Shown here: positions 21,042 to 38,816 of the stretch, one piece after another
How the letters are laid out: the number at the start of each line of letters is the position of its first letter
Position numbering within the stretch: position 1 is the first letter of the stretch
Assembly (NCBI GenBank): GCA_904063045.1
Contig: CAJFCJ010000003.1
Coordinates: 434,001-498,000 of the forward strand
Direction: 5' to 3'
Length of the DNA stretch: 64,000 bases
DNA from: Dimorphilus gyrociliatus
Lineage: Eukaryota > Animalia > Annelida
Made by a program: the position numbers and the translations under genes
Notes under the pieces: generated by a model
What the model saw: the letters and a program-made list of their open reading frames with translations, nothing else
The model's database searches: none
Told to the model about the DNA's origin: nothing

Positions 21042-24000
21042 TTAGACGAACCATTCTTTAACATCTTTCTTACTTTTTGTGGCTGTTGGTGCGACTACAA
21101 CTTGAGCATTTGGAGCAGTGCTTAGAACTGCTGTCTCTGTCGGCGGAGGTTTTGTGGCCGCTTGTTGGTAGGCTATATAATTTTTACTTTCATCGACTTT
21201 ATATGAACCGTCGTCTCTCGCTCGGTACTTGTAAAGTACATAAGTAACGATGAGCAAAAGAACCAAGACACCGCATGCTACTCCTATAATTAGTCCGAGA
21301 TTTAAAGAAAACTTCCCCGTTGATATCTCATTAGGCGGAGGTTCGGATGCTGGGTTAACAGAAACTGTAGTTTTGCGATTAAAAGGTTCATCATCTGTCG
21401 GTTCAACTGATAATATAGATGGTTCGTCTGAAGTGCGTGAATTTGTTGCCAAGTCAATGCCTTCCTTAGTTGTTGTACTCTTCCTGACCGGTGATACAGT
21501 CTTTGAGGTTGTTCTTGTTCTCTTTGTCGTCGGCACTGTAGAGTATACTTTTCCTATTGTTGTTCTTTTAGATACCGGCATTGAGGTTGAACTAACGGTT
21601 GCTGTCGTTGTGTATTTTGGTCGGTTAGTCGACTTTATAGAGGCGCTGCCCTCGTAATCCTCATCATCCGTTTCAATTGTTTCTGTAAGCGTTTTTGGCG
21701 TCGAAACTGGTCTGCTACTTGGCAAATGAGGAATAATAAAGGAAAAATGTAAAATAAATGCAACGTTGCTTTTATCTATAATGCAATCTTCTCTTTTTCA
21801 TCTTACCTGCTAGGAATGACGACCTTGGTAATCGGTTTAGGGCGGAAGACGGGCGTTATAAGGGCGTCTCTGGGAGTGGGCGTAACATTCGAACAGTCGT
21901 CCTCATCATCGCTTTGACAGCCAGAACCAGCGCCAGCCCCGGATGTAATTAGTTCTTCGGAGGGACTAGAGCCGGACTGCAAAATAATTGCTTATATTAC
22001 GATTGCCATCAGCATTAATATAAACACTGCAATAATATTAACAGCAGCATCAGATATGAATATAATTACACCGAGGACTTATTGCTACGATTATTAGAAA
22101 TTTTTCTCGTCAATTTACTTCTACAATATGTTGTCGATAGACGGAGCAATAGGCAGAGACAAGCGATTGAGGCCTACTCCTTAAAAATAGAAGGAGGAGC
22201 AAAAAGTGAGGCTAACAAATGCGTACAACTGCAAAAATCGATATATTAAGTGCAGGTTATGGAATACGATTGACACTAATTATGTCTTGGAACAAATTCT
22301 CCCGCACGTAATTAGCTTTGCACCGTGTCTCCATTCAACTTATTGATCAAAAGTATCGCACAAGGGAGGAGATAGTACATATACCTGATAAATCAGGATA
22401 GGTTCCATTAAAGGAAACGCTAGAGGGCACCAAAAAGCAACGGCATGCAATTACTGATTAACATGGAGATGAGAAGATAGAGACGATTTTCTAATTGATA
22501 GTAAGCGATTAAAGATTTAACATCCTATATTTCTGTCAACCGTATTGGATTTATGCGGTAGTTCTTTCATTATGCAACTGCAAAATTATATACCCAACCT
22601 TAAGCTTATTGGGCCATAACTCTCGCAACAGAACTACAGAGGGCGCACAGTTATTATACTTAATTCCACCCCCTTTCTCCTCTCTTTCTAAGACGTATTA
22701 AAGAATGACAGATGAGTTACCACACGAGAACCTATACCTATATCGATTACAAAACTGTAAACTGATAGCACATATACATATTAGTATATAATTCTACATA
22801 TAAGCATCTATATCGGCTAAGCTAAAATAGGTGGCGCGCAAATAAACTAACATATTCTCTGTTCAATTCATCAATTAAATTAAGAATATAAGCCCGAACT
22901 GGCTTTTAATTGATTAAGGGGTCGAAAGAGCAAACGAAAACATTCGCTTTACAAACAAGAATAAACAAGACAACCGACATTTCTCCATACAAAAGCAGGA
23001 TCGAAGGAGAATGAGAAAACGATAGAGAGAGAAAACAAGGGTGAGAGGAGGATATTCATGACCAATAGGTGGCACTCGTCTTTAAACGATGCTATGTTAC
23101 TCACGGAAAATAATAAGCAAGGAGATTGTTTCAATAGTAGAATATAGAAAATTATGAGATAGGATGAAAAGATATTCATAATTCGTTCATAATTTTCTCC
23201 TTCCGTAAGGCTACGAGTCAATCTTTTTATCCAAGGAGCGTTACTCGAGTGACGGCAGGCAAAGTGACGCTTTTTTTTCTAAATGCAACGCCACCAAGTG
23301 GTGAAGATTGGTATTGCTTGGCCTAATGCATATGGCTTTTTCGATTTTAGCATTTAATGTCACGAAAGGGTCGGATTTCCAGTTTTTCTAGATTTGTCCT
23401 TGAAAAGCAAAAAAAGGTAGCCAAGGGAAAAAACGTGCATAAAAAAATTGGAGCAACGTTGGCTGACGAAGGAGTAATTCATAGTTCCCAAAAAAAGACG
23501 ATCTGTACGTGGAGAGGGAGTGAAACAATCCATATTCTCGGCGTGAAACGGATTTTCTATTTCACGCCTGGAAAATTCAGTGGCAAACAAATTTCTTTCT
23601 TTGTACTTAAAAAGTGACGCAGCTCTTTTTGGGTCGGGCGTAAAACAAAGTCCAATTATTGAAATCAATAAATAAATAATTGAACATAATTCCATAAGTT
23701 CCCAATGTGTCTTCTAGTTTGTCGAAGAACGTGCGTAAGTGTTTGTAGTTGCTATTACCACTTTGCCCTTTTCATTTCATCTCTAATACTGTTTGTAAAT
23801 AATGAATGAGGATACCTACAACCTATAACATGAAATATTTAAAAAGCCTTCAAGTTTTAAACTCTCAATAGACTGGCTAATAATGCTCGCAATAGTCATT
23901 CAACAGCCACCCCTCCCTGAAAAGTGGAAAATATGATGCAAATTTTCCGCCCATTCAACACGACAAACCGCAAACGTGACAAGCACGGATAAATAGTTCG

Positions 24001-27000
24001 AAAATTGACCGTATCAACGGAATACATACATACGCCTACTGAACTGGGCCAAACTATATTTAAAGTATGAGAAATGAAATAAAGATTTTTTCCAATTCCC
24101 TTTACACAAACATGACAAACGCCAAACGGAAATTAGGATATAAAACATGGCAATAGGTGGCCCTAGTAGCATTGCCTACAGTATAATCGATTGACGAGAA
24201 AATTTTTTTTTCAAAGTAATCAATAAGGATCTACTCACCTTGACTTTGCCGGTGCTTTATACATAATATATATATGAAAAAGAGAGAAAAAAAAAACAAT
24301 TAACTAGAATACTTTAATTATCATTAATACAAAAGGTTCAATTCTTCGAAAGTGTACCTTGTTAAAGGAGATTTGTACTCTGTAACATTGCCGTGTATTT
24401 TAATTTTGTTGCTCCCATCTTTCGCAAGCGAAAATATATGGACTTTGTTAATAACTAGACCTATTTTGGTGAAAAACAATAACTCGTTAATATTAAAACG
24501 TAACGTGGGGTGCATATGACTGCTAACCGGATAAAATCCCCGTAAATAATTGATTTTTGGCCTCCATTGCGCCGGTTCCGATCAGAACTCTTTTGGCCCC
24601 TTTGAAGTGCCTACTGCTGGAATCTGTTGCAAAAAAAATGAATATAATTTAATCATATATCCAAATATACTATCATTTCTGTTATTAGAGTATAGATGGC
24701 GACAGGTGACAATAACGTTCGAAAAAGGTAAAAATTTTGGTGCTGAACGCCATCTATAGGGTATTTGTATCACAATTCGTTTGTCAAAATTGATTTGTTG
24801 ATTAGTTAATTATACGGAGTTATTGACAGGAAAAATTGAAAACAAACAAGTTAAACAAAAAAAAATTCGAAAAAATAGAATATTTCTTTTAAAAAGAAAA
24901 TGAAAGATATGTAAGGAAAAGGTTTTAGTAATTACTTGATTTTGATTGGTTGGCAAACTTTTTGAAATTATTTGGTATGATTTAGTACCAGTGAATTGGT
25001 GTGAAAAGTTAGTTTGGGTTATGCAAATCAGCCCCGCTTAAGCAAATATTATGATTTGAAGAGAATCTTAGTTGTTTGTACAACTAGTACTCTTTTACAA
25101 ACTTTTCTATATGTAATAAATATAGAATACACCGTTAAAATGTTCCAAACAGGTGAGAGTATTTTTTTTGTATCCTTTACCTGAATAATTTTCGATATAA
25201 TCCTCTCCAAGTAATTCTTTTAATAAAGAGGCTGCGTATTTTACAGAAGCATATAATAGAAAAGAAAAAGAAAGGCAAAAAAAACGGAAGAGAGATAAAA
25301 TAAAGAAATAACAAAAAAATGAATAAATTAAAAAGAGACAATTAATTCCGAGAAATCCATAAAAACAGGAAGTAGGCCGGTTATTTTGTATGAAAAAAAG
25401 AAGAACCAATAGGCTTTATATATATTATCATTCAAAAGAGATGAGATCGGTCAGGAAATGAGATATATAATGAGGCTCGTGGTTATATAAAAGGAAGAAA
25501 GGACGTTTGAAGGCTGCCTATTCCTTTTTGCCTTCTATCAGCATTAAAGCCGTATCTCCATAGATATGGACAGTATTATATTTATATATATATACTGTAT
25601 ATATACAGTAAATATATATAAAATACAGTATGTGTATTTATAGTGTATATATAAAATCTATCATCTCTTTTTACGTTGAAAGGGAGGAGAGCAAAAGCAT
25701 AGGCTTAGGTAAAAAGAGAAGAGAAGAGGGAACGTGTGTGGAAATATACCATTAGGTGATGGAAATGTGGGTGGGAGGATTTGTATCAGATATTATATAA
25801 TACATTAATGGCTTAATGTCCAATAATATTTGGTCGGCTATATTTTCATGCTACTTTTAGTAGGATAGGAGTTGTTTACCCTCCCTATGTAACCTAAGTG
25901 GCACCTCATTAATATTCCCCATTTCCTGAAGATATAAATTTAGACCAAACTTCTTTTTCATATCTTTTTTAATGACTTTACCTCTTTTCTTGGTTATCTC
26001 AATATTCTCATTCCTATCTACTTGAAGCCATGCCTTCTGGGCTTCACGCCGAAATCTGACAACATGATATTGACCATCAGAAACGTGCGAAAGAAGATAT
26101 AAACGAGATGCCGGTTTCTCTCCTCCAAGATTAAAAGATGCCAAAATGTTTCCCTGAGTCTGAAAATGAAAGGATATAATTGATATGCATTGAAATATAC
26201 AGGGTATAGTATGTGAAATGGGATACAGATGGCGTTTCTCCATTCCGATAGATAAGTATTATAGTTTTAGTAGGTTGAAAACTTACTAGTTCTATTTTTA
26301 TAAAGAAATTATGATGAGAACTTTGCAATTTTATAATGTCGCCACTTAAATCTGTAGTTTTGATGCCGAACGAAATTGTATCATTTAGGTTTGAGGCTGG
26401 ATGCTCAAGGTCGATATCGTAAACCATAAAGCTAGATTCAGAATCGGCCTTGGTCTCTTCATTGTGAAAGGCATAGGAAATTGCATCTGGATGAAAAAGA
26501 AACGATATCACGTTCACGGTCAAACCCCGTCCGACGGATAGCACTAATTCGGCACTCTCGGGAGGATGGGCAAGTAAGAAACAGAAGACATTATCGATTA
26601 TTACGATTATTTCTTTCTGTTGTTATTGTAAGGCTTGCACCCACCTCACCTCATTTCAGACTAATGAATAATTAAGAATTTAATCCAACAACTTACGTTG
26701 ATCGCATTGATTACCAACGAAAGAAGTCATTTCACAATCGCAACTAACTCTCGTAGGATGGAGTATGCATACACCTTGATTTTTGCACGTAGAATCGCCG
26801 CATTTATTTTCGGGAGCTGAGAAAAGAGTCAAACTAGTAATAAAAGAATATGAAATTTTTTTTTTACTTTTTTTTTCCATCTATTAATAAAGGAGAGTAA
26901 AAGTGAATTGTTAGTGATATTCTATAGGAATTTTCTTCCTTCTACTACTTTGATCCGGCTTAATGATGGAAATTCAAGTCTTACCAGAGCATCCGCTCTC

Positions 27001-30000
27001 AACGTTGCCATGCACATTAACGTCTTTCAGCGTGAGAATATTTGCGTAAGGCTTCAAATTGAAGATTCCGTTGAGATTCGCCAAACAACCCTGATAGCCC
27101 CTTCTCGATTTAACGTTTTTCGATGGTAAATCCCTGAAGACCAAATAACGTCTTGTTCTTTATCAGACAGAATTTAACACCAAGTCTAGAAACTATTCTC
27201 TATTGCATTAAGCATACACCGTAAAATATCTATTACGTATAACATTTCAAGAAGTTAACTAGTATTTTGTATACACAATGTTCTCTTCATTAATTGAATT
27301 CCTTTAAGAGCAACTGCTCGTTATTTTACTAGAAATCTAATTATGACACTTGTACGACGCCTATCTGTTCTATTTATCAGCTTACCGCAAATCCTCCACT
27401 CCGCCGACCCATACTTTACCGCTCGTCTTGAATTTTGTATTCTCGTTCATTCCCTTTATTGCGTACTTTTCGTCCACTCGTAGGATAAGCGATAACTTTA
27501 CACCTTCGGATTTGTATATAGCTATTTGGACACTGTGCCACTTATTATCATCGACTCTCATCGGATTTCTTAAGCTAGAGTGGTTTCCTTCAAAATTATA
27601 GACTAATTCCAGTCTAGAATTATGAATTTCAGCCATTAAATAATTTTTCGAATTGGCTCCGGGCATATACAAAACAACTCCTTCCGATTGAGTTGTTCGA
27701 AGTTTTAATGATATACCAAATGGTCCGTCTACCCTACTACCGTCAATGACGAAGTAATCTTCTCTACTTGGAAAATTAAAGGCGTAATCCTGTCAATCAA
27801 TATCTTAATGTTATCATAGGATTTAATAATTGTCATTATCATCCGTTCAACTGCTTTTACGTACCGTTGAAATTACAGGATCGATATTTGTTCTGTATGA
27901 CAAACCGCTGGCAGTTAAATCCCTATTATTATAATACAACTGTTGCATGCCGCCCTTGAACTTTCCAGCGCCAAAATTCAACGATCGAACATTTAAGATG
28001 TTCGCATTACGTTTAGTTCGACCTGAGAGAATCAAAAAACCATAAATAATGTATAAGAAAAGGGAGAATAAGTAGGAAAAAGTTTAATTAAAACGAGAAA
28101 AATAAATAACAGTAAAAAAATTAAAGGGGGGGAGGGGGAGGAGTAGTTGTTGGGTGGAGGGGGTGGTTCAATAAAGTCATTGATTTACGTGTCAGAGTTC
28201 ACTTAAAATAAATAATAAATTATACATTTTTCTGAACATAGAAAATCATTAATATCTATATTATCAACCTCTTACATCGAAACTACTTGATAATAACAAT
28301 AATGCTATTAACATTAAAATAAAAAATCATGCTAATTTATCCTATTGTTTCAGCAATCATTTCTTTATTTGCGGATCAATTACCCAGTTCATATAAGAAT
28401 AAATAAGAATGGATTATCCACTATTTATAAAAAAAACAATGCTGAAAAAAAAGGCCGAAAAGACCCTGGAAAAGCGTGCGCGCAGTTTTAATTAAAAGAG
28501 AAGTAACGCAGGCATTTTTTTTTCAACGAAAGCATTGATCTGTAAATTGATGAATCGGTAATTATTGTCTTAGCAACTGGTGTTTAATGAGCTGAAAAAA
28601 AATTGCTGTTCAGCGGACCGTCTAATCGGTTTGTCAATTGTTTGGTAAATGGAGGCGTTTGTAGCCAAAATAGGTAAACTTTATAGGTAAGCTGTATGTT
28701 ACATCGCTTATTAATCAATACTTCTACATTGATTTAAAAATGACAAAACTATTTGCATTATCTCAACTCTGTATCTATCGATGTTCGCCTCTACTGCAAC
28801 TTTTTTCAGTTCACTTGATAGATTCGAAAAAAAATATTAACTAAATGCTTGTACGAACTAAATAATAATAAAAATAAAAAAGTTCGACAATCGGCTTACT
28901 CTTTTTGATATTAATATCTAATAAGCCGATTCTGTGATCTCGCAAGCTTCAACAAATAGACAATAGGGTTTAAGGGTCATATTTTATAATCAACAACATC
29001 GAAATCAACAACAGAAAAACCCTACCGGAAGCGGAAGCCAAACCTCCTCCAAAGTCGTGAAAATCATCTGCAAGAGAATTTTTAGGAATTTGAAGCAATG
29101 GAAAAGCAAGAAAGAGGAAGGGGAAAGCTTAGTTTTTCTGGTAGTAATGAAATCGATAAAGAGAGGAATTTTCGCAGCTGTAACCGGCTTACCTCTAACT
29201 GTGTTCCTTTCGTCAACGCTTAAGGTGAGGCGGCGAGACGCCCTTTGCACTTTGGCCGTATGCCAATCGTCGTCATTCAAATTCGATCCGACGTAGAGTG
29301 TCTTAAGTCAAAGAAAAAGGCAAAAAATGAGAAAATTTGTTCTGGAAACTGTATGAGGAGCGTGATCATTAGATTTACGTTGGCGCCTGTTTAATCAATC
29401 GAACGTTTTTGAAGGAAGGTCAAAGCCAACCCCTAGACAATGAGCATATATATGTGAATATATATATATATGGTATATATCTAAATATATATTCGCATAC
29501 TGTCTATTGTAGTCGTGTTAATAAGAGACGCCCCAAAGCGTCGGCGAAACCTTAGAGGGTATAGGCGGTAGTTTATAGACTCTAAGAGTAAGTCGTAATT
29601 GGACGAGGTTTGTTGCTGCTGTTTTTCCACCAATATTCCATAGAGCATTGCAATTTTTTTCTTTAATTCTCTATCTTCTACTCATTACTAGCTCCCTTCC
29701 CACACCCTCTCTAATCCTTTTTGTCTATGCTGAAAGTTAAGAATGACGGATAGAGCTTGTGTAAGATTTACTTAATCTCGAATAGAATTACACGTAGACG
29801 GCTTTTCTTTTCGCGTCCGCCTTTTTCCCTTTGTTGTCCGGAATAGCCGTATACTGGAATGCGGAGATTGCGGTGGATTATAATAGGCAAGCGTCGAGAT
29901 ATATATACTCTTTGATGCCCCTCCTCTACACTTTTTTGCCGCCTTTGATTACATGGATGGCGAAAGACAGCCTCAGTTCTTATCATCCTCCTCGAATACA

Positions 30001-33000
30001 CTTGTGCCTAAAATATTCCGGAAAAAGCGCGTCTCGCTCGTCGATTTCATTGATCTCATTAATATTTATGCTGTCATTACGATCAACAATGACAACATGT
30101 GTATATTTTGTATTCGAAATCACGAGTCAATCGTGCAATGTGCACCTGATTGTTCGATATTGGTCTTCGATTGTTGAGAGGAGTTTCTTCAGTCATGTCG
30201 CATGATGTACGTTCCCTCCCCCTCATCTCTTTTCTACATCTGCTCTTTCTTAATTACACGGATAAGTGAAACGTCGCTACACTACTTTTAATTAATTGCA
30301 CTCGAGTTAATCTAGACCTATAGGCCTAAGGTCTAACGTCCTGTCACGAGCTAATCTCGGAAAAAGTATATATGTAAGTGTTTTCAATCAATGACTAGTT
30401 TTAAAGCCAATTTAAGTACTTAACAGTGTAAATGTGATACCAGCTATTAATTATTATAATATTTGCATATATAAATAGAGTAATAAAAGGGATTATTAAA
30501 CCTTAAGATTTCAATACCAATTTTATGATTCTATTGATATATAATAAATTATTTATATCTTCAAGCTCATTCACTAAGGCGCATATAATATTTGAGTTAC
30601 AAGTTTATTACACACCGAATACACACATCTGTCTACAGACGTATACCTTCTAAATTCTACATTTTTTAATAAGCCTACTTATATCAAACTGGCTTCTCCA
30701 CCGCCGATTGCTTTTTTTTTCAATTACGAAAATCTAGTTTTTTTAGCGGTTTTTCTCTGGACGAGTGTCACAATCATAAATATTCATAAATCACTTTTCC
30801 AAGCCGCGCTCCACCATCGTTTGCGGTTCGCATTGCTTGATTCTTTTATACATATATATGTATATATAGATATATATTTAATATATATCTATATACATAT
30901 ATTTATATCTAGCCTTGATTATATTCCGATTTAATGACAGAATATATCTAAAAAAAAAAGAGAGAGAGAGACTAGGCCTATTGAATGTCAACAATTGCCT
31001 TGTATTATTTCATAGTTTGCTACTGTTTTACTGCTAGAGTTACATTTACTCATATTCTATTCAATATTTTTACAACAAACATATTTCTTTTCATACTTGA
31101 ACACATCAGTCGGGATTTTGAATTACTTCATTTAGCTGGTACCTTATAAGCTTGATGCCTTTCTATTTTACGGTTCTATTTCGTTCTTGGAATATAAATT
31201 TTATGGAGAGAAAGGAACGAAGGGAGAATTACGAGTAATTTGTTTAATTAGATTTAAAAGAAAATTAAAGGCAATAATCAATGAAGAACTCTTCTCGTGA
31301 ATTGAATCTTTTGAGAGGCGGATAAACTATTCAGTTTTTCTTATTTTTTTTTGTTTTTCTCTCCTTCCTCCCTATTTTAGGGGAGAAAAGCAAATATTCT
31401 CTTTCTAGACATTCTTCCCACTTGGAACAATTGCCAAGTACACTCACCTAATATTTCGCGCATAACACAGGTATCATTCACTAGACCATACTTGTCTTTC
31501 GTAAAATTCAAGTCACGTGACCTCTTGCAGAGAGGTCACGCTCCATACGCAAAACTTATTTGCATAAATAGATCAATCTCGGAACAGATAATCAGTTTAT
31601 CTTCCGTTAACAGTATGATTAATGGATTTAACCTAAAACACAACGAATAGCAAAGGAAAAATATTAATGTTACTGATATAAAAAGACATCGTTAGAGAGA
31701 TGAAAAAATTCTGTTTGCACTTATGGAGATTGAACACGAAATTTGAGTAAAAGGTATATCCGTGCTTGAATTATTAGAGAAGTAGAAATATATCACACAT
31801 ATATGTATGACAATATATATATATATATGGAACATGGAAACAAAATGATATCAAAATATAGAAATTGTTTATAAAGCTTGTTCTGTATGCAAACTCTCTT
31901 CGGGGAGAGTGAAAAGAGCCTAAGGAAAACTGGGGAAAGAAATATACCTTGGGATCTGTCTACAATTTAAAAAGCGAATATTCCTACTTATTTTCGCATG
32001 TTTTTGCCTAAGGTATTCTACTATTCTTCTAGAAAGGTGAACGTGTTCGTTATTCCGTTCCTCTTCTCTTTTCACTCCTTTTTACTTCTCCGGACGTTAA
32101 TTAGCTTCAATGACCTAGCATTAGCATTCTACTTTGACGTTTAACTGTAGTCAACTCAACTAACGGCTATTGTTCTTTACTAAATATCAATCGACATTTG
32201 CGTAACAAACATTTATTCGCCGAATCGCCTGTCCGATCAGGCGTCTGGGGCGTCGGCAGCGAAATTCACGATTAAAAAACCGCAATAACTGTTTGAGTAG
32301 TTAATTAAAAAGTTATTAAAATTAACACTCACCTTCTTACCAGCTCCCAAGTTTACGGACAATTTAAGAACTCCTTCTTCAAGTTCTAGCAACATCTTAT
32401 CGGCGCTAGCCGAATCCGTTCGAAAGATTATAGTGTTGCTCTGTTTTGTCTTGAACCTTAAAGATACTTCATCTATTTCTGAATTTTCTACTCCTTCCAC
32501 AATCCAAAATTTGGTACTGCCGTCGAATAAAAGAATCGAAACGGCTAAAAGGGAATATATAAACATGGTCATTTGGTAACGCCCATCGCCAATAATATAA
32601 TGAAAAGTCTGCTAAACTACTGCAAAGGATGGGGAACTCAAACGCCACCTGTCGGATGTTTAAAAAATTCCCCCTATTTTTGAATTGATTCCTAGTTATT
32701 TTTCTCGGTCCGCTACTTCTAAAAAGGACTCACCAACTGCAACGTTTGCTATCCAAACGAAAGCGAGTTGTTTGTCACTTTGTCATAATTCTTTTTCAAA
32801 TCATTTGAAAACAAACGCTTTTTTGGTAGTTTGTCACTGTCAGGTGAAGGCCGGAAGGAGCTTTCTAATGTTTTGATAGTGTAACTAATTGCTTATAGTT
32901 TTTAACGGAAATTGTTTCAGTTATTAGCCTATAATTGTAGTCAAAAAGACTGACGGTGAATAGTAGACGAAATAGGAAAACGACAGAAATTTTTTTTTAT

Positions 33001-36000
33001 TCTAAAATTTGCTGATTGCTGCGACAGCCGCGCCTGAAAAGGTCTCGGGGATGAGTTTTGGGAATTAGATGGGCTGTCCCTAGTGCGGGAATTTCCACCT
33101 TCCGGTAGACGACACACACAGAACGACCGAGTTAAACAAGTTCTAACTTCCCCCGGAAACGGAGATAAACGTCGTCGACAAGCAAAACTAAAGTCTTCGG
33201 GGAGCCCAGGTGCATTCAGTCAGACTAACGTCTTTTCACAATTTCCGCTCTTGTCACCGCCCAAGCAAGAGCGTCGTTCGAACGTTGATAACGTGCTTGG
33301 CATGTTTTTTTCTCCTTCTCTTATTCCTCTTTACCAACTATTTCTTGTCGAGAAAAATGCCACTATAGATAACTTTAATTGGATTGGGGGGTCAAAGAAA
33401 ATCAAAAGAGGAGAAGAGGAATTCAGGCCAGTAAGAACGCCTAGGCTAGACGGTCTTGATTACTAAGGGATTAAACGCAGATCCCTTAGATAATAGAAAA
33501 AGTACAGTTTGCGGGACGCCACAAAAAAATTATTCGATATAGAATTCCATACTTCAGGCCATTGTCTGTCAGATAAGACGTTTCAGGCAGCAACCAGTCA
33601 AACGCGTTTATCATATTAGTGACGCCCAGCAAACGTTAAATGATTGAACAAAGTTAAGTGGCGGCACACTCGTTTTCGTTTTTCCTACAAACTAGTCAGT
33701 TGGTTTGTCAATACTACTTTTATCTTACTTCATTGGCTTACGCTCTAACACCAGATGGCGATTGAGCTGAGAGTACTTACGTTTATCGCAGTTTTTTCCT
33801 TTGAATGACGTGGCCCGACAATCACAGGTGTAACTGTCCCAGCTTCTTTTACAAATACCACCATTCCAGCACGGGGAAGAAGCACACGAACTGGCAGTGA
33901 TACTTTCACAGCCTCTCCTAACATCTATAAAGAGTAAAGTAACGTAATAAGAAGATAAATTTACATAAGAAACTAACCGTAAAGTGTTTGTTTTTTCTGA
34001 CTGTTCCATAAATCAACAACCCTGTCGTTTAACTCAACTCTTCGAATACAACCCTGAAAGCCGAATCCTAATTTTCCGGACCAGAATTCTTTTGGGTAAT
34101 CAGAACTCTGATTTAAAGCACCTAAATACAAACTACCGGAAGCTAAATTTAATTCTGCACTCTTTCGATCTGAAGAATATCTAATAAATTCGTCTTGGTC
34201 CAAGTAAACTTTACCAGTTTCTCCATTATGCTCCAAACGAACGTCATGCCATAATCCATCATTTACCGGTTTCTCGCTGATCTTTGCCTTTATCAATAAT
34301 AATACGCAATTAAGATTCTACTAAGAGAAGGTTGTTAAATATTTATTCTCTATTTACTTTCAACGTGCCCCCTCCGTAATTAATAATTAGATATAATTGG
34401 CTCTCAAAGACCTCGAGACCAAAAAAATCCTTCCTCCCTCGACCCATCACTAATTGACTGCTGTTTTGTACAGTTCGAAACTCCAAGTGTAATTTACTGC
34501 CTGGAATTGCCAGCCAAGGTTCTAGAATAACCGAGCTAGACTGGGAGGCGAAGAAAATGGCTTGTGAACAACCCTTAAAGCTAACTCCTCCTTCAATGTG
34601 AAAAAGCTGGTTCTCTTTTTTAGCCCATCGTAAAATATCTATTTTCATCGAATCTGCCTGATAGCCGACCTTTTTCAAGCACCCAGTAAAATTCTTAATA
34701 CTTTTCCCGCTGCCGTCCCAAATAGCGTCATCTCCAGCGCCTCCTAGATAGAGAAGAGAACTTCGAAGGCTGCTAAAGTTTCCAGTTATTGAGGTAGATG
34801 GCGTAGTGTGTTCTTTATCGACAGTCACTTTTACCTAGGGAAGAAGGCTAATTACTTACAATTGAATCTGTAAGTAGAAGATGCTTTTAAAAGGAAGAGT
34901 GTTTTTTTTTGTATGAGAAAAAATGGGTAAAAAATAACAAGCAAACAATAAAGGAATGGAGCACATGCAAAAAGATTGCCCTGTACGATAATGATGACTC
35001 TTATTCCGCATGCTTAGGAACCTTACCTCACAGATAGCTCGATTTATTAGCTGTAACATAATGGTGGATTTCGTGTTACACAATAAAATTGATATTACGC
35101 AAGATGAATTTTTTAATATAATTATAGATATATATTAAAGTACACTTATACGCATTTATTCAAATTTCACCTTCAAATTTCAAATATTTTCTTTCAGTGA
35201 GTATCACTCGTATACAAACTAACCTGCCTTGTTTTCCGCGCTACAAACACACGATGCCACTTGTTATCGTGGAAGTGGGCGGAAGGGGATGCGCGAATGG
35301 ATTTTCTTGGAGAGGCCACCAATTTGACGTCGACGATAATTTTACCTCGTCGCAAATATATCGTCAAGTGTTCGTTTTCAGCTCCTGTAGAAGAGCGTGT
35401 AAGAAAAAATATAAGATAATTATGTTAGCTGCTACCAATTAGCGAAAGATTTCGTTTCTCTCGTTTTAATTAGTAATATGCTATACGTGGATATTATTTT
35501 ATTAATAACTTTTGATTTTCTTCTCTTTTTTCGGAGCTTTAGTACATTACTCGTATCTTACCGGTGTAAAGTAGAAGGCCGTTTCCGTTTAGAGTCCTAA
35601 AATAGAACGTCACTTGGTCGTTCCAGGAGGAGATGGAGTGCTTCTTGCGTGCAGACAAATCGTAGCTAATAAACTGTCGACCGTCGAAGGTCGCTTCCAG
35701 TTTCTCGTCCAGTTGCTCTACAAAGCCCACAAGTAAGAAAAAGGGTAAAGCTAAATTGGCGAAAGGAAAGTGGATTGGTCAAGATTTTTATCGCCTTGGG
35801 AGCAATTCTACGGTCTTTGTTATGTGAAAAGCGCTTTGCATTGATCACGTGGACAATATGTCCTGAAGGTTTCTTTATAAGATTACACAAATTAGAGCAC
35901 ATTTTTTGCTTTTGTGTTACCTGGCAGAATTTCACTTATGTTTAATTGCGTAAGTACTTTGATATCTCCCCTTACAAATGCTTACATATTTAATGTAATT

Positions 36001-38816
36001 TGAAGAAATTCTAACAAAACAGGTGAAAATTGTCGACTTTATTATATTAGCTACTTAAATTAAGCAATTAAAGACTGATGTGCTTATTATACAAGCTACT
36101 TTGAGAATTTTTAATGGAATTGTTTGCTCAAAGGCAAAGTAATTTTAATGATTTGTTTAATTATTGATCTATCTTTTTATGTCTCTTGACCATTTTACAA
36201 TTTGGTTCCGTGAAATAAAACTCCAAGTGCTTTCAAATCCCGCCTACTACCGACAGCCTTTGTCTTCCCATGCCTCCTTTCTCTTCTGTTTGTTCTATTC
36301 TTATTCGGTGTTCATCTCTATAGGCTGCCATTGTTGATGGAGAAAAGACTTTTTAAATGAAGAAAAGGTAGAGCGAGTGAGAAAGAAATTCTATTTAAAA
36401 ACATACACGGGTGTAGATTGGCTGGTGAAATAATAGAGAAGGAGAAAGAATACAAAAGAAACAAAAACAGCTCTTGGCAGGCATCAATTTTCTACAATTT
36501 TTTCTACCAGATTATGAACAATGATGGATTTTCACCAAATGTCTCCTCACCATCCATAAAGAAAGGCGCAAATTAAACGACAAATGGTAGAAATTCGCAA
36601 AGAAGCTGACGACAAACGAATAACAAACAACCTCGTGTCAAGAATTTGTGTATTTCCAAACCAATCCGATATATATTGGGGTTAGACTATGAAGGAAACT
36701 GTATAGGGCCAATCAATGCCTTTCGGTCGATGTATAGAATCGATTCTGTAATAGTAGGAGCGTTAAAGAGCTCGGGGAAAAGACGGTTTGGTAAAAAAAA
36801 AAAGGGGGGCCGTTCGATTTGGACGCCCAGTTGCGTGTTGGGGGTGGCGTTAATTGGTATAGTGGGACAAGGCGATTCGAGTCACGAATTTGACTGAGAA
36901 GCACCTGCTGGATGTTAAACTGACACTCTGACACTTTTCATCCGAATTATTCGTCATTTTGTATCGATCTAATGAAGCTAAGTACATTGGAAGGAGGGTG
37001 GACTCCCTTTAGATTGTAAATCCTATTATTTATGGTAAGGAAAGATACTTGGGAATATGAAACAGTTGGTTGGACGTACATAAAAATTGATAGATGCCAG
37101 AAAGTGTTTTTTGAGTAGAGGAGGTTGCAAATGCTCTTGATAATTCCCCTAATCCCTTTACAAGTTTGCCTATTAATCGCACAACGTTGCTTTGTTGCGA
37201 AGAGGCTAATACAGTGTATAAATATATTATGTACGTTTAAATTAGCCCTCTTGACACCTCTCGCTTTCTCGCTTAAATAGACAACTCAATTGGATTATCG
37301 CTTCTCACTAAGGCACTTGCAAGACTCTTTCAATTCTGTTTCCTACTCGCGAACCAACGTCTCAATATCACCCTTAGCCCCTCCCCAAAGACGCTTATAA
37401 GATTTTGTCGAACGATCGAGCTACCGGCAATTAAAAAGAGAACTCTTTGACGCTTAGCGATTGCCCTATTATGCGACTCTATTGTTTAGTCTCAATTGGA
37501 AATTTCGAGGGTTCTTCAACCTCAACTAATTGCAACGACTCCTGGCAGAAGATCGAAATTTTGTTGATTTTCGTCTCTCGAAATACAACAAAACTGTACT
37601 AGAATCGTCGTTATCGTCCTTTAGTTTCCTTTTTCAATCGATTCTTCTCTTCGACTTTCCTCACGAGGAGCGGAGAAAGAAAAGCTGGTCGGCGTTATTA
37701 AGTTACGATACTTGGCCTCACGACCCGTTTGCTCTACGTTAACGTTAATCTTATCAACAAAAAGAAATACTTGGACATTTTTCTCACCACAAATACAACC
37801 ACAAAATCTTCTTTTCCCCATTAATCCCCCCGCAATTTTGTAGGCCTACCTATTCCTATTCCTTATACGGAAAGTAATCGTGTTAAGCGTCTAGCGATAT
37901 TATTGGATTTAATGGAGCAGAAAGGAGAGCTGAGAGTTTATATTATCGCCTACCTATTTCGCAAGATTTTCCTGTATATCGAGTTGATTTGCATTCGCAA
38001 AGTGATGAATTATCCATTGAATAGCATCTTCCCCCGTTTTTGCAGGGATTGTGTACAAGACAGAAATCTTTCTCATCTTCTTTCGCTGCGTGTTTTCCAG
38101 TTATCTTCGGAGCTCGTTTCAATCTGAGATTTAATAAAATGGAAATCGATTTTTGATTAATTAATTCTCTGTCTTACCTGCCACACTGGGAAAAGAATAT
38201 ATTCTTAATAGTTCCTTTTAACTTGTCCGCAAAGAAGGAGGCAATGTTGGCTAATTTGTACAATTTTAATTCGAAGCTGCTCGGTAAGCCACCAAAGTAG
38301 ACTCTATTGAATTTGGAAGAAGGATGAACTTCAGATGGCGATTCAACTTTCAGCACCTGAATTGATCTATCATCCACTTTGAAAAGAAGATGATTTCGAG
38401 CGAAGAGAATATTGATCTTATGAAATCGGTTATCGGTTATCGTACGATCATCTTTAACAGTATACGGAAAGCTAAAAGGAGGGAAAAGAAGGGAAAAATT
38501 ATGCTTTTATTTAGGGCAATTGGCCACTGGAGGATAATATTCCAAACCTGGTAAATGATTCTAGAAAAATTTTGAAAACAAGTTTGCCATCTTGTATTGT
38601 TAATTCGATAAAATCTCTTCCAGAAGTCTGGGTGTACATAAGCAGACCTATCTTCTCTGTAGTCTTAAATTCGAATTCCAACGATCCATTTGAGCATGGA
38701 TTCCATGTTTGAAATGCTACATAGGCCCCGGTCACGTCCTCAAGAAACAGTGTTCTGGCCTGTGCGATAGCAATAACAAGCGTGAAATGCAGCAAGGAAA
38801 GAAAATTCAAGGCCAT
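21042..38816 (-). CDS. NRXN: Alpha-neurexin (signal peptide, LNS1-EGF-LNS2-LNS3-EGF-LNS4-LNS5-EGF-LNS6, Cys-loop, Thr-rich stalk, TM, PDZ-binding tail); 1523 aa from 21 core exons: 38816-38548, 38471-38178, 38123-37954, 35717-35562, 35384-35224, 34834-34358, 34287-33978, 33924-33781, 32544-32333, 29301-29193, 28022-27865, 27789-27386, 27133-26985, 26816-26697, 26486-26287, 26159-25982, 24623-24528, 24460-24358, 24254-24239, 21976-21807, 21717-21042
   Basis: Signal peptide MALNFLSLLHFTLVIAIAQA, three EGF repeats, LNS motifs (DNKWH, NDDDWH, DGQYHVVRFRR), Cys-loop SGAGAGSGCQSDDEDDC, TM, YKYRARDDGSYKVDESKNY and C-terminal KDVKEWFV*. Exon lengths sum to 4572 nt with consistent phases. Confidence 0.95.
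23105..23179 (-). CDS. Candidate alternative first coding exon (signal peptide MNIFSSYLIIFYILLLKQSPCLLFS) of a gamma-neurexin-like short isoform
   Basis: ATG at 23179, hydrophobic core, and a perfect GTGAGT donor in phase 0 matching the phase-0 acceptor of the Cys-loop exon at 21976. Confidence 0.6.
25181..25231 (-). CDS. Candidate 51-nt cassette exon in LNS6 (SS4 position), encoding ASLLKELLGEDYIENYS
   Basis: CAG acceptor after a ~150-nt U-rich tract, CAG|GTAAAG donor, phase 1-1, no stop codon. Confidence 0.6.
31948..31959 (-). CDS. Candidate 12-nt micro-exon in LNS4 (TDPK), near the SS3 position
   Basis: TTTTTAAATTGTAG acceptor, AAG|GTATAT donor, phase 0-0. Inclusion gives DPKTLYVG, aligning with vertebrate GPETLFAG. 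Confidence 0.5.
32734..32748 (-). CDS. Candidate 15-nt micro-exon in the EGF2-LNS4 linker
   Basis: TTTCGTTTGGATAG acceptor, perfect GTGAGT donor, phase 1-1, reads PNVAV. Confidence 0.45.
35027..35050 (-). CDS. Candidate 24-nt cassette exon in LNS2 (SS2 position), encoding LINRAICE
   Basis: TTACAG acceptor, GAG|GTAAGG donor, phase 0-0, located between ...RKTRQ and VKVTVD... Confidence 0.62.

What the first reader, a model, noticed from the sequence alone, without database searches (positions are those of the whole stretch)
25181..25420. Cassette exon at the position of vertebrate neurexin splice site 4
Seen: the LNS6 intron falls after ...EITKKRG, equivalent to vertebrate ...ERYPAG|RQLTIFN, and holds a 51-nt phase 1-1 exon (ASLLKELLGEDYIENYS) preceded by an unusually long U-rich tract. 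Established: the vertebrate SS4 insert (30 aa) at this point switches binding to neuroligins, LRRTMs and cerebellins and is controlled by STAR/PTB proteins. Inference: SS4-type switching may predate vertebrates or have evolved convergently with a different insert.
Basis: partly seen in the sequence, partly recalled or inferred. Interest (0 to 1): 0.8.

Follow-up and report, generated by a model that had tools for sequence, protein, structure and literature searches.

The report
Annelid neurexin splice-site-4 cassette candidate
A 51-base stretch in the neurexin gene of the tiny marine worm Dimorphilus looks like an optional exon at the exact spot where vertebrates switch neurexin's synaptic partners; gene models or DNA of octopus, oyster, ribbon worms, two other annelids and lobsters show candidate optional exons there too, but I could not check whether the worm's own exon is used in RNA.

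Summary
The window carries the alpha-neurexin gene of Dimorphilus gyrociliatus on the minus strand. A 1,358-nt phase-1 intron splits LNS6 at the vertebrate SS4 position. Inside it lies a 51-nt, stop-free, phase 1-1 segment (25231-25181, ASLLKELLGEDYIENYS). It has a CAG|GTAAAG donor and a 180-nt AG-free U-rich tract before its acceptor.

Skipping it gives an LNS6 collinear with all homologues, so it would be a pure insertion. It is the best of 26 frame-preserving candidates in the intron, and I expect about 0.014 such sites by chance.

SS4-position inserts are not confined to vertebrates. RefSeq isoforms of Octopus (two combinable cassettes), oyster, Lineus and decapods carry them. I also found unannotated phase 1-1 cassettes in the same intron of Capitella, Owenia and Tubulanus. 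Reviews say such splicing is exclusive to vertebrates.

The Dimorphilus peptide resembles none of these inserts significantly.

Verdict: probably a real, alternatively used SS4-type cassette (about 0.6), unproven. The scan also logged this same stretch as s1-081139.

The parts
25982..26159 (-). Constitutive LNS6 exon upstream of the SS4-position intron. It ends ...EITKKR plus 1 base (phase 1).
   Evidence: Pfam Laminin_G_2 E=1.8e-7; 100% match to annotated DgyrCDS2040 residues 320-378
24624..25981 (-). SS4-position intron, 1,358 nt, phase 1, about 20 times the genome's median intron length (66 bp).
   Evidence: median intron from PMC7854359; same position and phase in five other invertebrates
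25234..25413 (-). AG-free U/C-rich tract (180 nt) before the cassette acceptor. It holds 15 UCUU/UUCU tetramers (8.1 per 100 nt against 2.7 in the rest of the intron).
25232..25233 (-). Candidate 3' splice site AG. The last 13 nt before it (gtaaaatacgcag) are purine/A-rich, so the pyrimidine tract is set back, which makes the acceptor sub-optimal.
25181..25231 (-). Candidate cassette exon, 51 nt, phase 1-1. It inserts ASLLKELLGEDYIENYS between R and the split-codon D.
   Evidence: unique in the window
25179..25180 (-). Candidate 5' splice site, CAG|GTAAAG. The intron hexamer is the same as at the constitutive donor at 25981.
25149..25157 (-). CTCACCTGT, complementary to a 5' splice site. The same 9-mer lies just downstream of the Capitella cassette donor.
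   Evidence: P about 0.011 by shuffling; predicted pairing with the donor in both species, though fold z-scores are not significant
24528..24623 (-). Constitutive LNS6 exon downstream (D-SSSRHFKGAKRVLIGTGAMEAKNQLFTGILS), phase 1 to 1. It is absent from the public annotation.
   Evidence: collinear with homologues

Best explanation
The segment 25231-25181 is a real, alternatively included cassette exon of the single alpha-neurexin gene of Dimorphilus gyrociliatus. It lies in the ancient phase-1 intron that corresponds to vertebrate splice site 4. Skipping (25982 joined to 24623) gives the canonical LNS6. Inclusion adds 17 residues in the loop at the rim of LNS6 where the vertebrate SS4 insert sits, which would change which partners LNS6 binds. 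The set-back pyrimidine tract makes the acceptor weak. The long UCUU-rich tract and a 5'-splice-site-complementary element downstream are plausible handles for regulated use.

Shown: the anatomy, the position and phase homology, and the existence of SS4-position cassettes in other protostome models. Inferred: inclusion in RNA, alternative use, regulation and effect on binding.
For: 1. Exon anatomy. It has the best donor and the longest AG-free pyrimidine tract of 26 frame-preserving candidates. The chance expectation is about 0.014.
2. A confirmed exon of the same gene (acceptor at 28022) has the same kind of 177-nt AG-free tract. Such tracts therefore mark real acceptors after long introns in this gene.
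3. Without the segment, LNS6 is collinear with over 200 homologue sequences. The segment is therefore an insertion, not constitutive sequence.
4. The intron is 1,358 nt in a genome with a 66-bp median. The neighbouring intron is 67 nt.
5. The same intron and phase occur in Capitella, Owenia, Lingula, Tubulanus and Saccoglossus.
6. Isoforms with and without inserts at this point exist in Octopus (two cassettes, four combinations), Magallana, Lineus and Homarus.
7. Unannotated phase 1-1 cassettes were found in the same intron of two other annelids and a second nemertean: Capitella P=0.004, Owenia P=0.002, Tubulanus score 51. Annelid ancestors therefore probably had one.
8. Dimorphilus and Capitella share a 9-mer downstream of the donor.
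Against: The word search for transcript-derived proteins was blank. Two JGI scans with exon words were blank.

The public annotation has no exon here. The peptide is not significantly similar to any other SS4 insert (shuffle P 0.14-0.75; P=0.74 against the nemertean type).

The cassette appears absent from many lineages: all gastropod isoforms seen, Lingula and Saccoglossus. Loss is therefore common. The chance estimate uses thresholds set after seeing the site. The fold of the donor region is not better than shuffles.
Confidence: 0.6

Rival explanations
1. Chance pseudo-exon. An open 51-nt stretch with splice-like ends happens to follow a low-complexity T-rich tract, and the spliceosome never uses it.
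For: 26 frame-preserving AG...GT segments exist in this intron alone, and 43% of 17-codon windows there are stop-free. There is no sequence similarity to other SS4 inserts. It is not annotated and no transcript-derived protein was found. The exon is 27% G+C, like the intron.
Against: The combination of a strong donor, a 180-nt AG-free pyrimidine tract, correct frame and no stop is expected about 0.014 times in this intron. The tract type marks a real acceptor elsewhere in the gene. Related phyla have cassettes at this very point.
Confidence: 0.2
2. Relic or noise exon. A decaying descendant of the ancestral annelid SS4 cassette, or a new exon, that is spliced in only rarely and has no selected function.
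For: The ancestral VFxWLLD-type sequence is not recognisable. The acceptor is sub-optimal. The cassette seems to have been lost repeatedly in other lineages.
Against: Frame, lack of stops, a strong donor and a very long pyrimidine tract are all kept in a genome that has removed most non-functional intron sequence. The host LNS6 itself is only about 36-40% identical to its homologues, so a surface loop would be expected to diverge beyond recognition.
Confidence: 0.12
3. Constitutive exon. The 17 residues are always present, and Dimorphilus LNS6 simply has a longer loop.
For: The public model breaks at exactly this intron, so the true major form is unknown. The donor is as good as the constitutive one.
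Against: Every homologue has a form without an insert here, and where inserts exist they are optional. The acceptor is weaker than the constitutive acceptors of the gene. The flanking constitutive sites are strong and compatible with skipping.
Confidence: 0.08

Closest known systems
Vertebrate neurexin splice site 4 (30-residue cassette in LNS6 of NRXN1-3)
   Same: The host gene is an orthologue. The insertion falls in the same loop at the same split codon, as shown by alignments to solved LNS6 chains with and without the insert and by fish isoform pairs. The length is a multiple of three and the flanks are pyrimidine-rich. In vertebrates PTBP2 and SAM68 control the exon.
   Different: The insert is 17 rather than 30 residues, with no significant sequence similarity. 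Alternative use is not shown. The vertebrate ligands that read SS4, cerebellins and LRRTMs, are reported to be missing outside vertebrates. I did not test the vertebrate intron phase.
Spiralian SS4-position cassette of the V-F-x-W-L-L-D type (Lineus RefSeq isoforms, Octopus cassette A; unannotated in Tubulanus, Owenia, Capitella)
   Same: Same intron, same phase 1-1 and similar size (11-13 residues against 17). The phyla are neighbouring and it occurs in two other annelids. Dimorphilus shares the CTCACCTGT element after the donor with Capitella.
   Different: The Dimorphilus peptide does not match the motif (P=0.74). Only the Lineus and Octopus versions are backed by RefSeq isoform models. The annelid and Tubulanus versions are my own genomic predictions.
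Other protostome SS4-position inserts: Magallana SFLSKLFSVNEFP, Octopus cassette B EEFGPMHVFPS, decapod ENVELSDLKVLKKLRSRIWH
   Same: The insertion point is the same and the protein sequences are consistent with phase 1. Forms with and without the insert exist in Magallana, Octopus and Homarus. The insert sequences are unrelated or barely related across lineages, as in Dimorphilus.
   Different: The sequences and lengths differ. No genomic DNA could be fetched for these genes, because they were too long or not on record.
Honeybee neurexin I
   Same: [quoted passage not shown]
   Different: No cassette at site 4 was reported in the bee. None of the insect isoforms I saw has a convincing one.

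Membership tests
Neurexin SS4 alternative cassette (vertebrate definition) | The host is a classical alpha-neurexin (LNS and EGF repeats, one transmembrane segment, PDZ-binding tail). | tested here: met
   Exons from about 38816 to 21042 match neurexins along their length. Laminin_G, EGF and Syndecan-type tail hits. The C-terminus is ...KKDVKEWFV.
Neurexin SS4 alternative cassette (vertebrate definition) | The insertion point lies in LNS6 at the ...YPA|G|RQL... split codon. | tested here: met
   The 13 residues from the split codon to the conserved IGG are the same count as in Capitella. There is one extra residue upstream.
Neurexin SS4 alternative cassette (vertebrate definition) | A symmetric cassette that keeps the reading frame, with canonical splice sites. 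| tested here: met
   51 nt, phase 1-1, AG and GT present, no stop.
Neurexin SS4 alternative cassette (vertebrate definition) | Both inclusion and skipping forms are present in RNA. | not testable with these tools
The protein word search and two JGI scans were blank.
Neurexin SS4 alternative cassette (vertebrate definition) | The insert is homologous in sequence to the 30-residue vertebrate insert. | tested here: not met
   Best local scores were 12 and 17, with shuffle P of 0.71 and 0.16.
Neurexin SS4 alternative cassette (vertebrate definition) | Controlled by STAR-family (SAM68/SLM) and PTB proteins through AU-rich and pyrimidine-rich elements. | tested here: inconclusive
   UCUU/UUCU density is three times higher upstream. 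UWAA is not enriched downstream. Motif counts are not binding data.
Neurexin SS4 alternative cassette (vertebrate definition) | The insert changes ligand binding of LNS6. | not tested
   This needs binding assays. AlphaFold2 of Lineus LNS6 with its insert gives a confident core and a low-confidence insert loop (pLDDT below 60).
Spiralian V-F-x-W-L-L-D SS4 cassette (defined here) | A phase 1-1 exon inside the SS4-position intron. | tested here: met
Spiralian V-F-x-W-L-L-D SS4 cassette (defined here) | The peptide matches the nemertean cassette. | tested here: not met
   Score 12, P=0.74, against P=0.004 for Capitella and 0.002 for Owenia.

The most novel reading that the evidence does not exclude
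An optional cassette at neurexin splice site 4 is ancestral to spiralians and possibly to all bilaterians, not a vertebrate invention. On this reading the V-F-x-W-L-L-D core of the nemertean, annelid and cephalopod cassettes is homologous to the ...VVD(D/E)WLLDK end of the vertebrate insert. The Dimorphilus exon would be its fast-diverged orthologue, still used as a switch for partners other than cerebellins and LRRTMs.
Probability: 0.3. Interest if true: 0.85.

Novelty: new variant of a known kind. Interest (0 to 1): 0.62.

Why it matters
SS4 is the best-studied molecular switch of synapse specification. Reviews state that extensive neurexin splicing is exclusive to vertebrates (PMC12665717, PMC10084454).

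If invertebrates also toggle an insert at this point, the switch predates its known vertebrate readers, cerebellins and LRRTMs. It must then have first served other partners such as neuroligin. That question could be tested directly in small, tractable nervous systems.

Dimorphilus has an 18-kb neurexin gene and a miniature nervous system, so it would be a convenient place to delete or force the exon. I did not find it in the literature held here.

Tried and rejected
2. **Transcript-derived proteins.** The exhaustive representative search with the upstream exon found only the annotated fragment, and its 90% cluster has one member. The word search with the 128-aa open frame around the exon was blank.
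3. **JGI metagenome scans** with a 25-mer of the upstream exon and a 28-mer of the cassette gave 0 hits.
4. **A better, nemertean-like cassette elsewhere in the Dimorphilus intron.** None was found.
5. **Similarity of the Dimorphilus peptide to the oyster or decapod inserts** (SLLKEL/SFLSKL, LLKEL/VLKKL) looked tempting by eye but is not significant.
6. **Statistics for Capitella and Owenia.** When the best of eight references is taken instead of the nemertean type, P rises to 0.14 and 0.10. I rely on the single-family test together with Tubulanus.
7. **A 5'-splice-site hairpin.** It is present in the predicted folds, but the folds are no more stable than shuffles.
8. **Genomic DNA for the RefSeq-supported cassettes** (Lineus, Octopus, Magallana, Homarus). 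The genes were too long or not on record.
9. **AlphaFold2 of Lineus LNS6 with its insert.** The insert has low confidence, so nothing can be said about its shape.
10. **Repeat or transposon origin of the tract.** It is unique in the window.

Two local scripts listed open segments over the whole intron, including those places. Later scripts used only the pieces beside them.

Full report
**What is there**

The window is from Dimorphilus gyrociliatus (assembly GCA_904063045.1, contig CAJFCJ010000003.1). An exon translated from it is 100% identical to the annotated protein DgyrCDS2040. On the minus strand, from about 38816 to 21042, lies one alpha-neurexin gene. It has a signal peptide, LNS and EGF modules, a transmembrane segment with a Syndecan-type tail, and ends ...KKDVKEWFV. 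The public annotation cuts this gene into at least four models. DgyrCDS2040 ends by reading through the donor at 25981 into the intron, and nothing is annotated between 25857 and about 22408.

**The observation**

The upstream LNS6 exon is 26159-25982 with donor GAG|GTAAAG. The candidate is 25231-25181 with acceptor ...gtaaaatacgcag| and donor CAG|GTAAAG. The downstream exon is 24623-24528. The intron is phase 1.

The 100 nt before the acceptor are 61% T and 77% pyrimidine. No AG occurs for 180 nt.

**Is it more than chance?**

An open AG...GT segment alone is not. The intron holds 26 frame-preserving ones, and 43% of its 17-codon windows are stop-free. This segment, however, has the best donor and the longest AG-free pyrimidine tract of the 26.

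Over both strands of the window there are 23 acceptor-like sites with at least 100 nt free of AG and at least 70% pyrimidine. Nine of them have a strong donor within 150 nt, and several of those are real exons. Scaled to this intron, and multiplied by 1/3 for frame and 0.43 for no stop, the expectation is about 0.014. The thresholds were chosen after the fact, so this is a rough figure.

The confirmed exon starting at 28022 in the same gene follows a 177-nt AG-free pyrimidine tract of the same kind. The intron is 1,358 nt in a genome whose median intron is 66 bp (PMC7854359). The next intron of the gene is 67 nt. The segment is unique in the window.

**Position**

Without the candidate, Dimorphilus LNS6 is collinear with all homologues retrieved. 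Fish neurexin isoforms with and without the 30-residue insert place SS4 at ...FPSG|RQLT. HMMER alignments to solved LNS6 chains with and without the insert confirm this.

On genomic DNA the same split codon carries a phase-1 intron in five other species: Capitella, Owenia, Lingula, Tubulanus and the hemichordate Saccoglossus. The honeybee paper reports the same coincidence (PMC2570956). The intron is therefore ancient, and the Dimorphilus one is its orthologue. Dimorphilus has one extra residue upstream of it.

**SS4-position inserts outside vertebrates**

This was the unexpected result. RefSeq isoform sets show optional inserts at exactly this point:
- Octopus sinensis and O. bimaculoides have two cassettes, VSSWYIGEILDP and EEFGPMHVFPS. 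They occur in all four combinations.
- Lineus longissimus has VFSWLLDDEVQLT.
- Magallana gigas has SFLSKLFSVNEFP. A transcript-derived protein lacks it.
- Decapods have a 20-residue insert. One Homarus isoform lacks it.

In every case the first and last residues fit a phase-1 cassette.

I then searched the SS4 intron of species with single models and found short phase 1-1 exons with canonical sites:
- Tubulanus: VFTWLLDDSVQSS, score 51 against Lineus.
- Owenia: VFDWLADSYMT.
- Capitella: AYHLLVNEVQLT.

Against Markov-shuffled introns, with the nemertean cassette as the single reference, P is 0.002 for Owenia and 0.004 for Capitella. If the best of eight references is allowed, these weaken to 0.10 and 0.14. 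Lingula and Saccoglossus show nothing, and no gastropod isoform has an insert.

The V-F-x-W-L-L-D core resembles the VVD(D/E)WLLDK end of the vertebrate insert (shuffle P 0.01-0.03). This is suggestive only.

I found no paper describing any of this. Reviews say extensive neurexin splicing is exclusive to vertebrates.

**Dimorphilus in that context**

Two other annelids, one of them the early-branching Owenia, appear to carry a cassette here, so the ancestor of Dimorphilus probably did too. The Dimorphilus peptide, however, matches none of the known inserts, and no better candidate exists in the intron.

This is weak evidence against orthology. The Dimorphilus LNS6 exon is only about 36-40% identical to the Haliotis and Capitella neurexins. 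The Capitella and Owenia LNS6 regions are 57% and 49% identical to Lineus, and their cassettes are about half identical to the Lineus cassette. At the Dimorphilus level of divergence a short surface loop would not be recognisable.

One small link exists. The 9-mer CTCACCTGT, complementary to a 5' splice site, lies 6 nt after the Capitella donor and 23 nt after the Dimorphilus donor (P about 0.011). In both predicted folds it pairs with the donor, but the folds are no better than shuffles.

**Mechanism (inferred)**

The insert would sit in the loop where the vertebrate SS4 insert sits. AlphaFold2 of Lineus LNS6 with its insert gives a confident sandwich (most blocks above pLDDT 90) and a low-confidence insert. 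That fits a flexible surface loop.

In vertebrates the insert changes binding to neuroligins, LRRTMs, latrophilin and cerebellins. It is controlled by PTBP2 and SAM68. In Dimorphilus the upstream tract is three times richer in UCUU/UUCU than the rest of the intron, and the acceptor's pyrimidines are set back 13 nt from the AG. That is the look of a repressible exon. Which partners are affected is unknown, because cerebellins and LRRTMs are reported absent outside vertebrates.

**What could not be done**

Searches for transcript-derived proteins and two JGI scans were blank.
- I did not build or submit a joined spliced model, so the Dimorphilus LNS6 was not folded with and without the insert and junction sequences were not searched.

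**Verdict**

The segment is most likely a real, optional SS4-type cassette (0.6). The rivals are a chance pseudo-exon (0.2), a rarely used relic (0.12) and a constitutive exon (0.08). The comparative finding, that SS4-position cassettes are widespread in protostome gene models and genomes, is the stronger and more general result.

Noticed in passing
window 21042-38816 (minus strand): The public annotation splits this single neurexin gene into at least four models. One of them (DgyrCDS2040) ends by read-through of the donor at 25981. The LNS6 C-terminal exons 24623-24528 and 24460-24358 are unannotated.
   Followed up: partly
window 24239-24254 (minus strand): A 16-nt microexon (ag|CACCGGCAAAGTCAAG|gtgagt) is needed to keep the frame between the exon ending at 24358 (phase 2) and the exon starting at about 21970 (phase 0). 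It is unannotated.
   Followed up: partly
window 25675-25703 (minus strand): A second strong acceptor-like site lies in the same intron, with a 106-nt AG-free tract of 85% pyrimidine. It is followed after 29 nt by AAC|GTAAAA. Inclusion would shift the frame, so it may be a poison exon or a decoy. It is unexplained.
   Followed up: no
window 31185 and 36770 (minus strand): Further acceptor-like sites with AG-free pyrimidine tracts over 100 nt lie inside other long neurexin introns. The one at 31185 has strong donors 59 and 142 nt downstream. These may be more hidden exons.
   Followed up: no
window, neurexin introns 37955-35421, 33779-32548, 32330-29304, 29128-28022, 25981-24624, 24238-21971: Six introns of 1.1-3 kb sit in a gene whose other introns are 67-250 nt, in a genome with a 66-bp median. 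Another note of this scan (s1-081140) proposes a 24-nt cassette at the SS2 position in one of them.
   Followed up: no
L002 37584-37619; L003 25363-25395; L005 36190-36228: Unannotated phase 1-1 cassettes lie in the SS4-position intron of Capitella teleta (AYHLLVNEVQLT), Owenia fusiformis (VFDWLADSYMT) and Tubulanus polymorphus (VFTWLLDDSVQSS). They are related to the RefSeq-annotated Lineus cassette.
   Followed up: yes
proteins P0137, P0139, P0027, P0140 (Octopus); P0198, P0199, P0202 (Homarus); P0011, P0004 (Magallana): RefSeq isoform sets show combinatorial use of two SS4-position cassettes in Octopus. They also show optional inserts in lobster and oyster. Reviews state that such neurexin splicing is vertebrate-only.
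   Followed up: partly
L002 37620-37640 and window 25149-25157: The shared element CTCACCTGT, complementary to a 5' splice site, lies just downstream of the cassette donor in Capitella and Dimorphilus. In Capitella it forms a 7-bp hairpin that buries the donor.
   Followed up: partly
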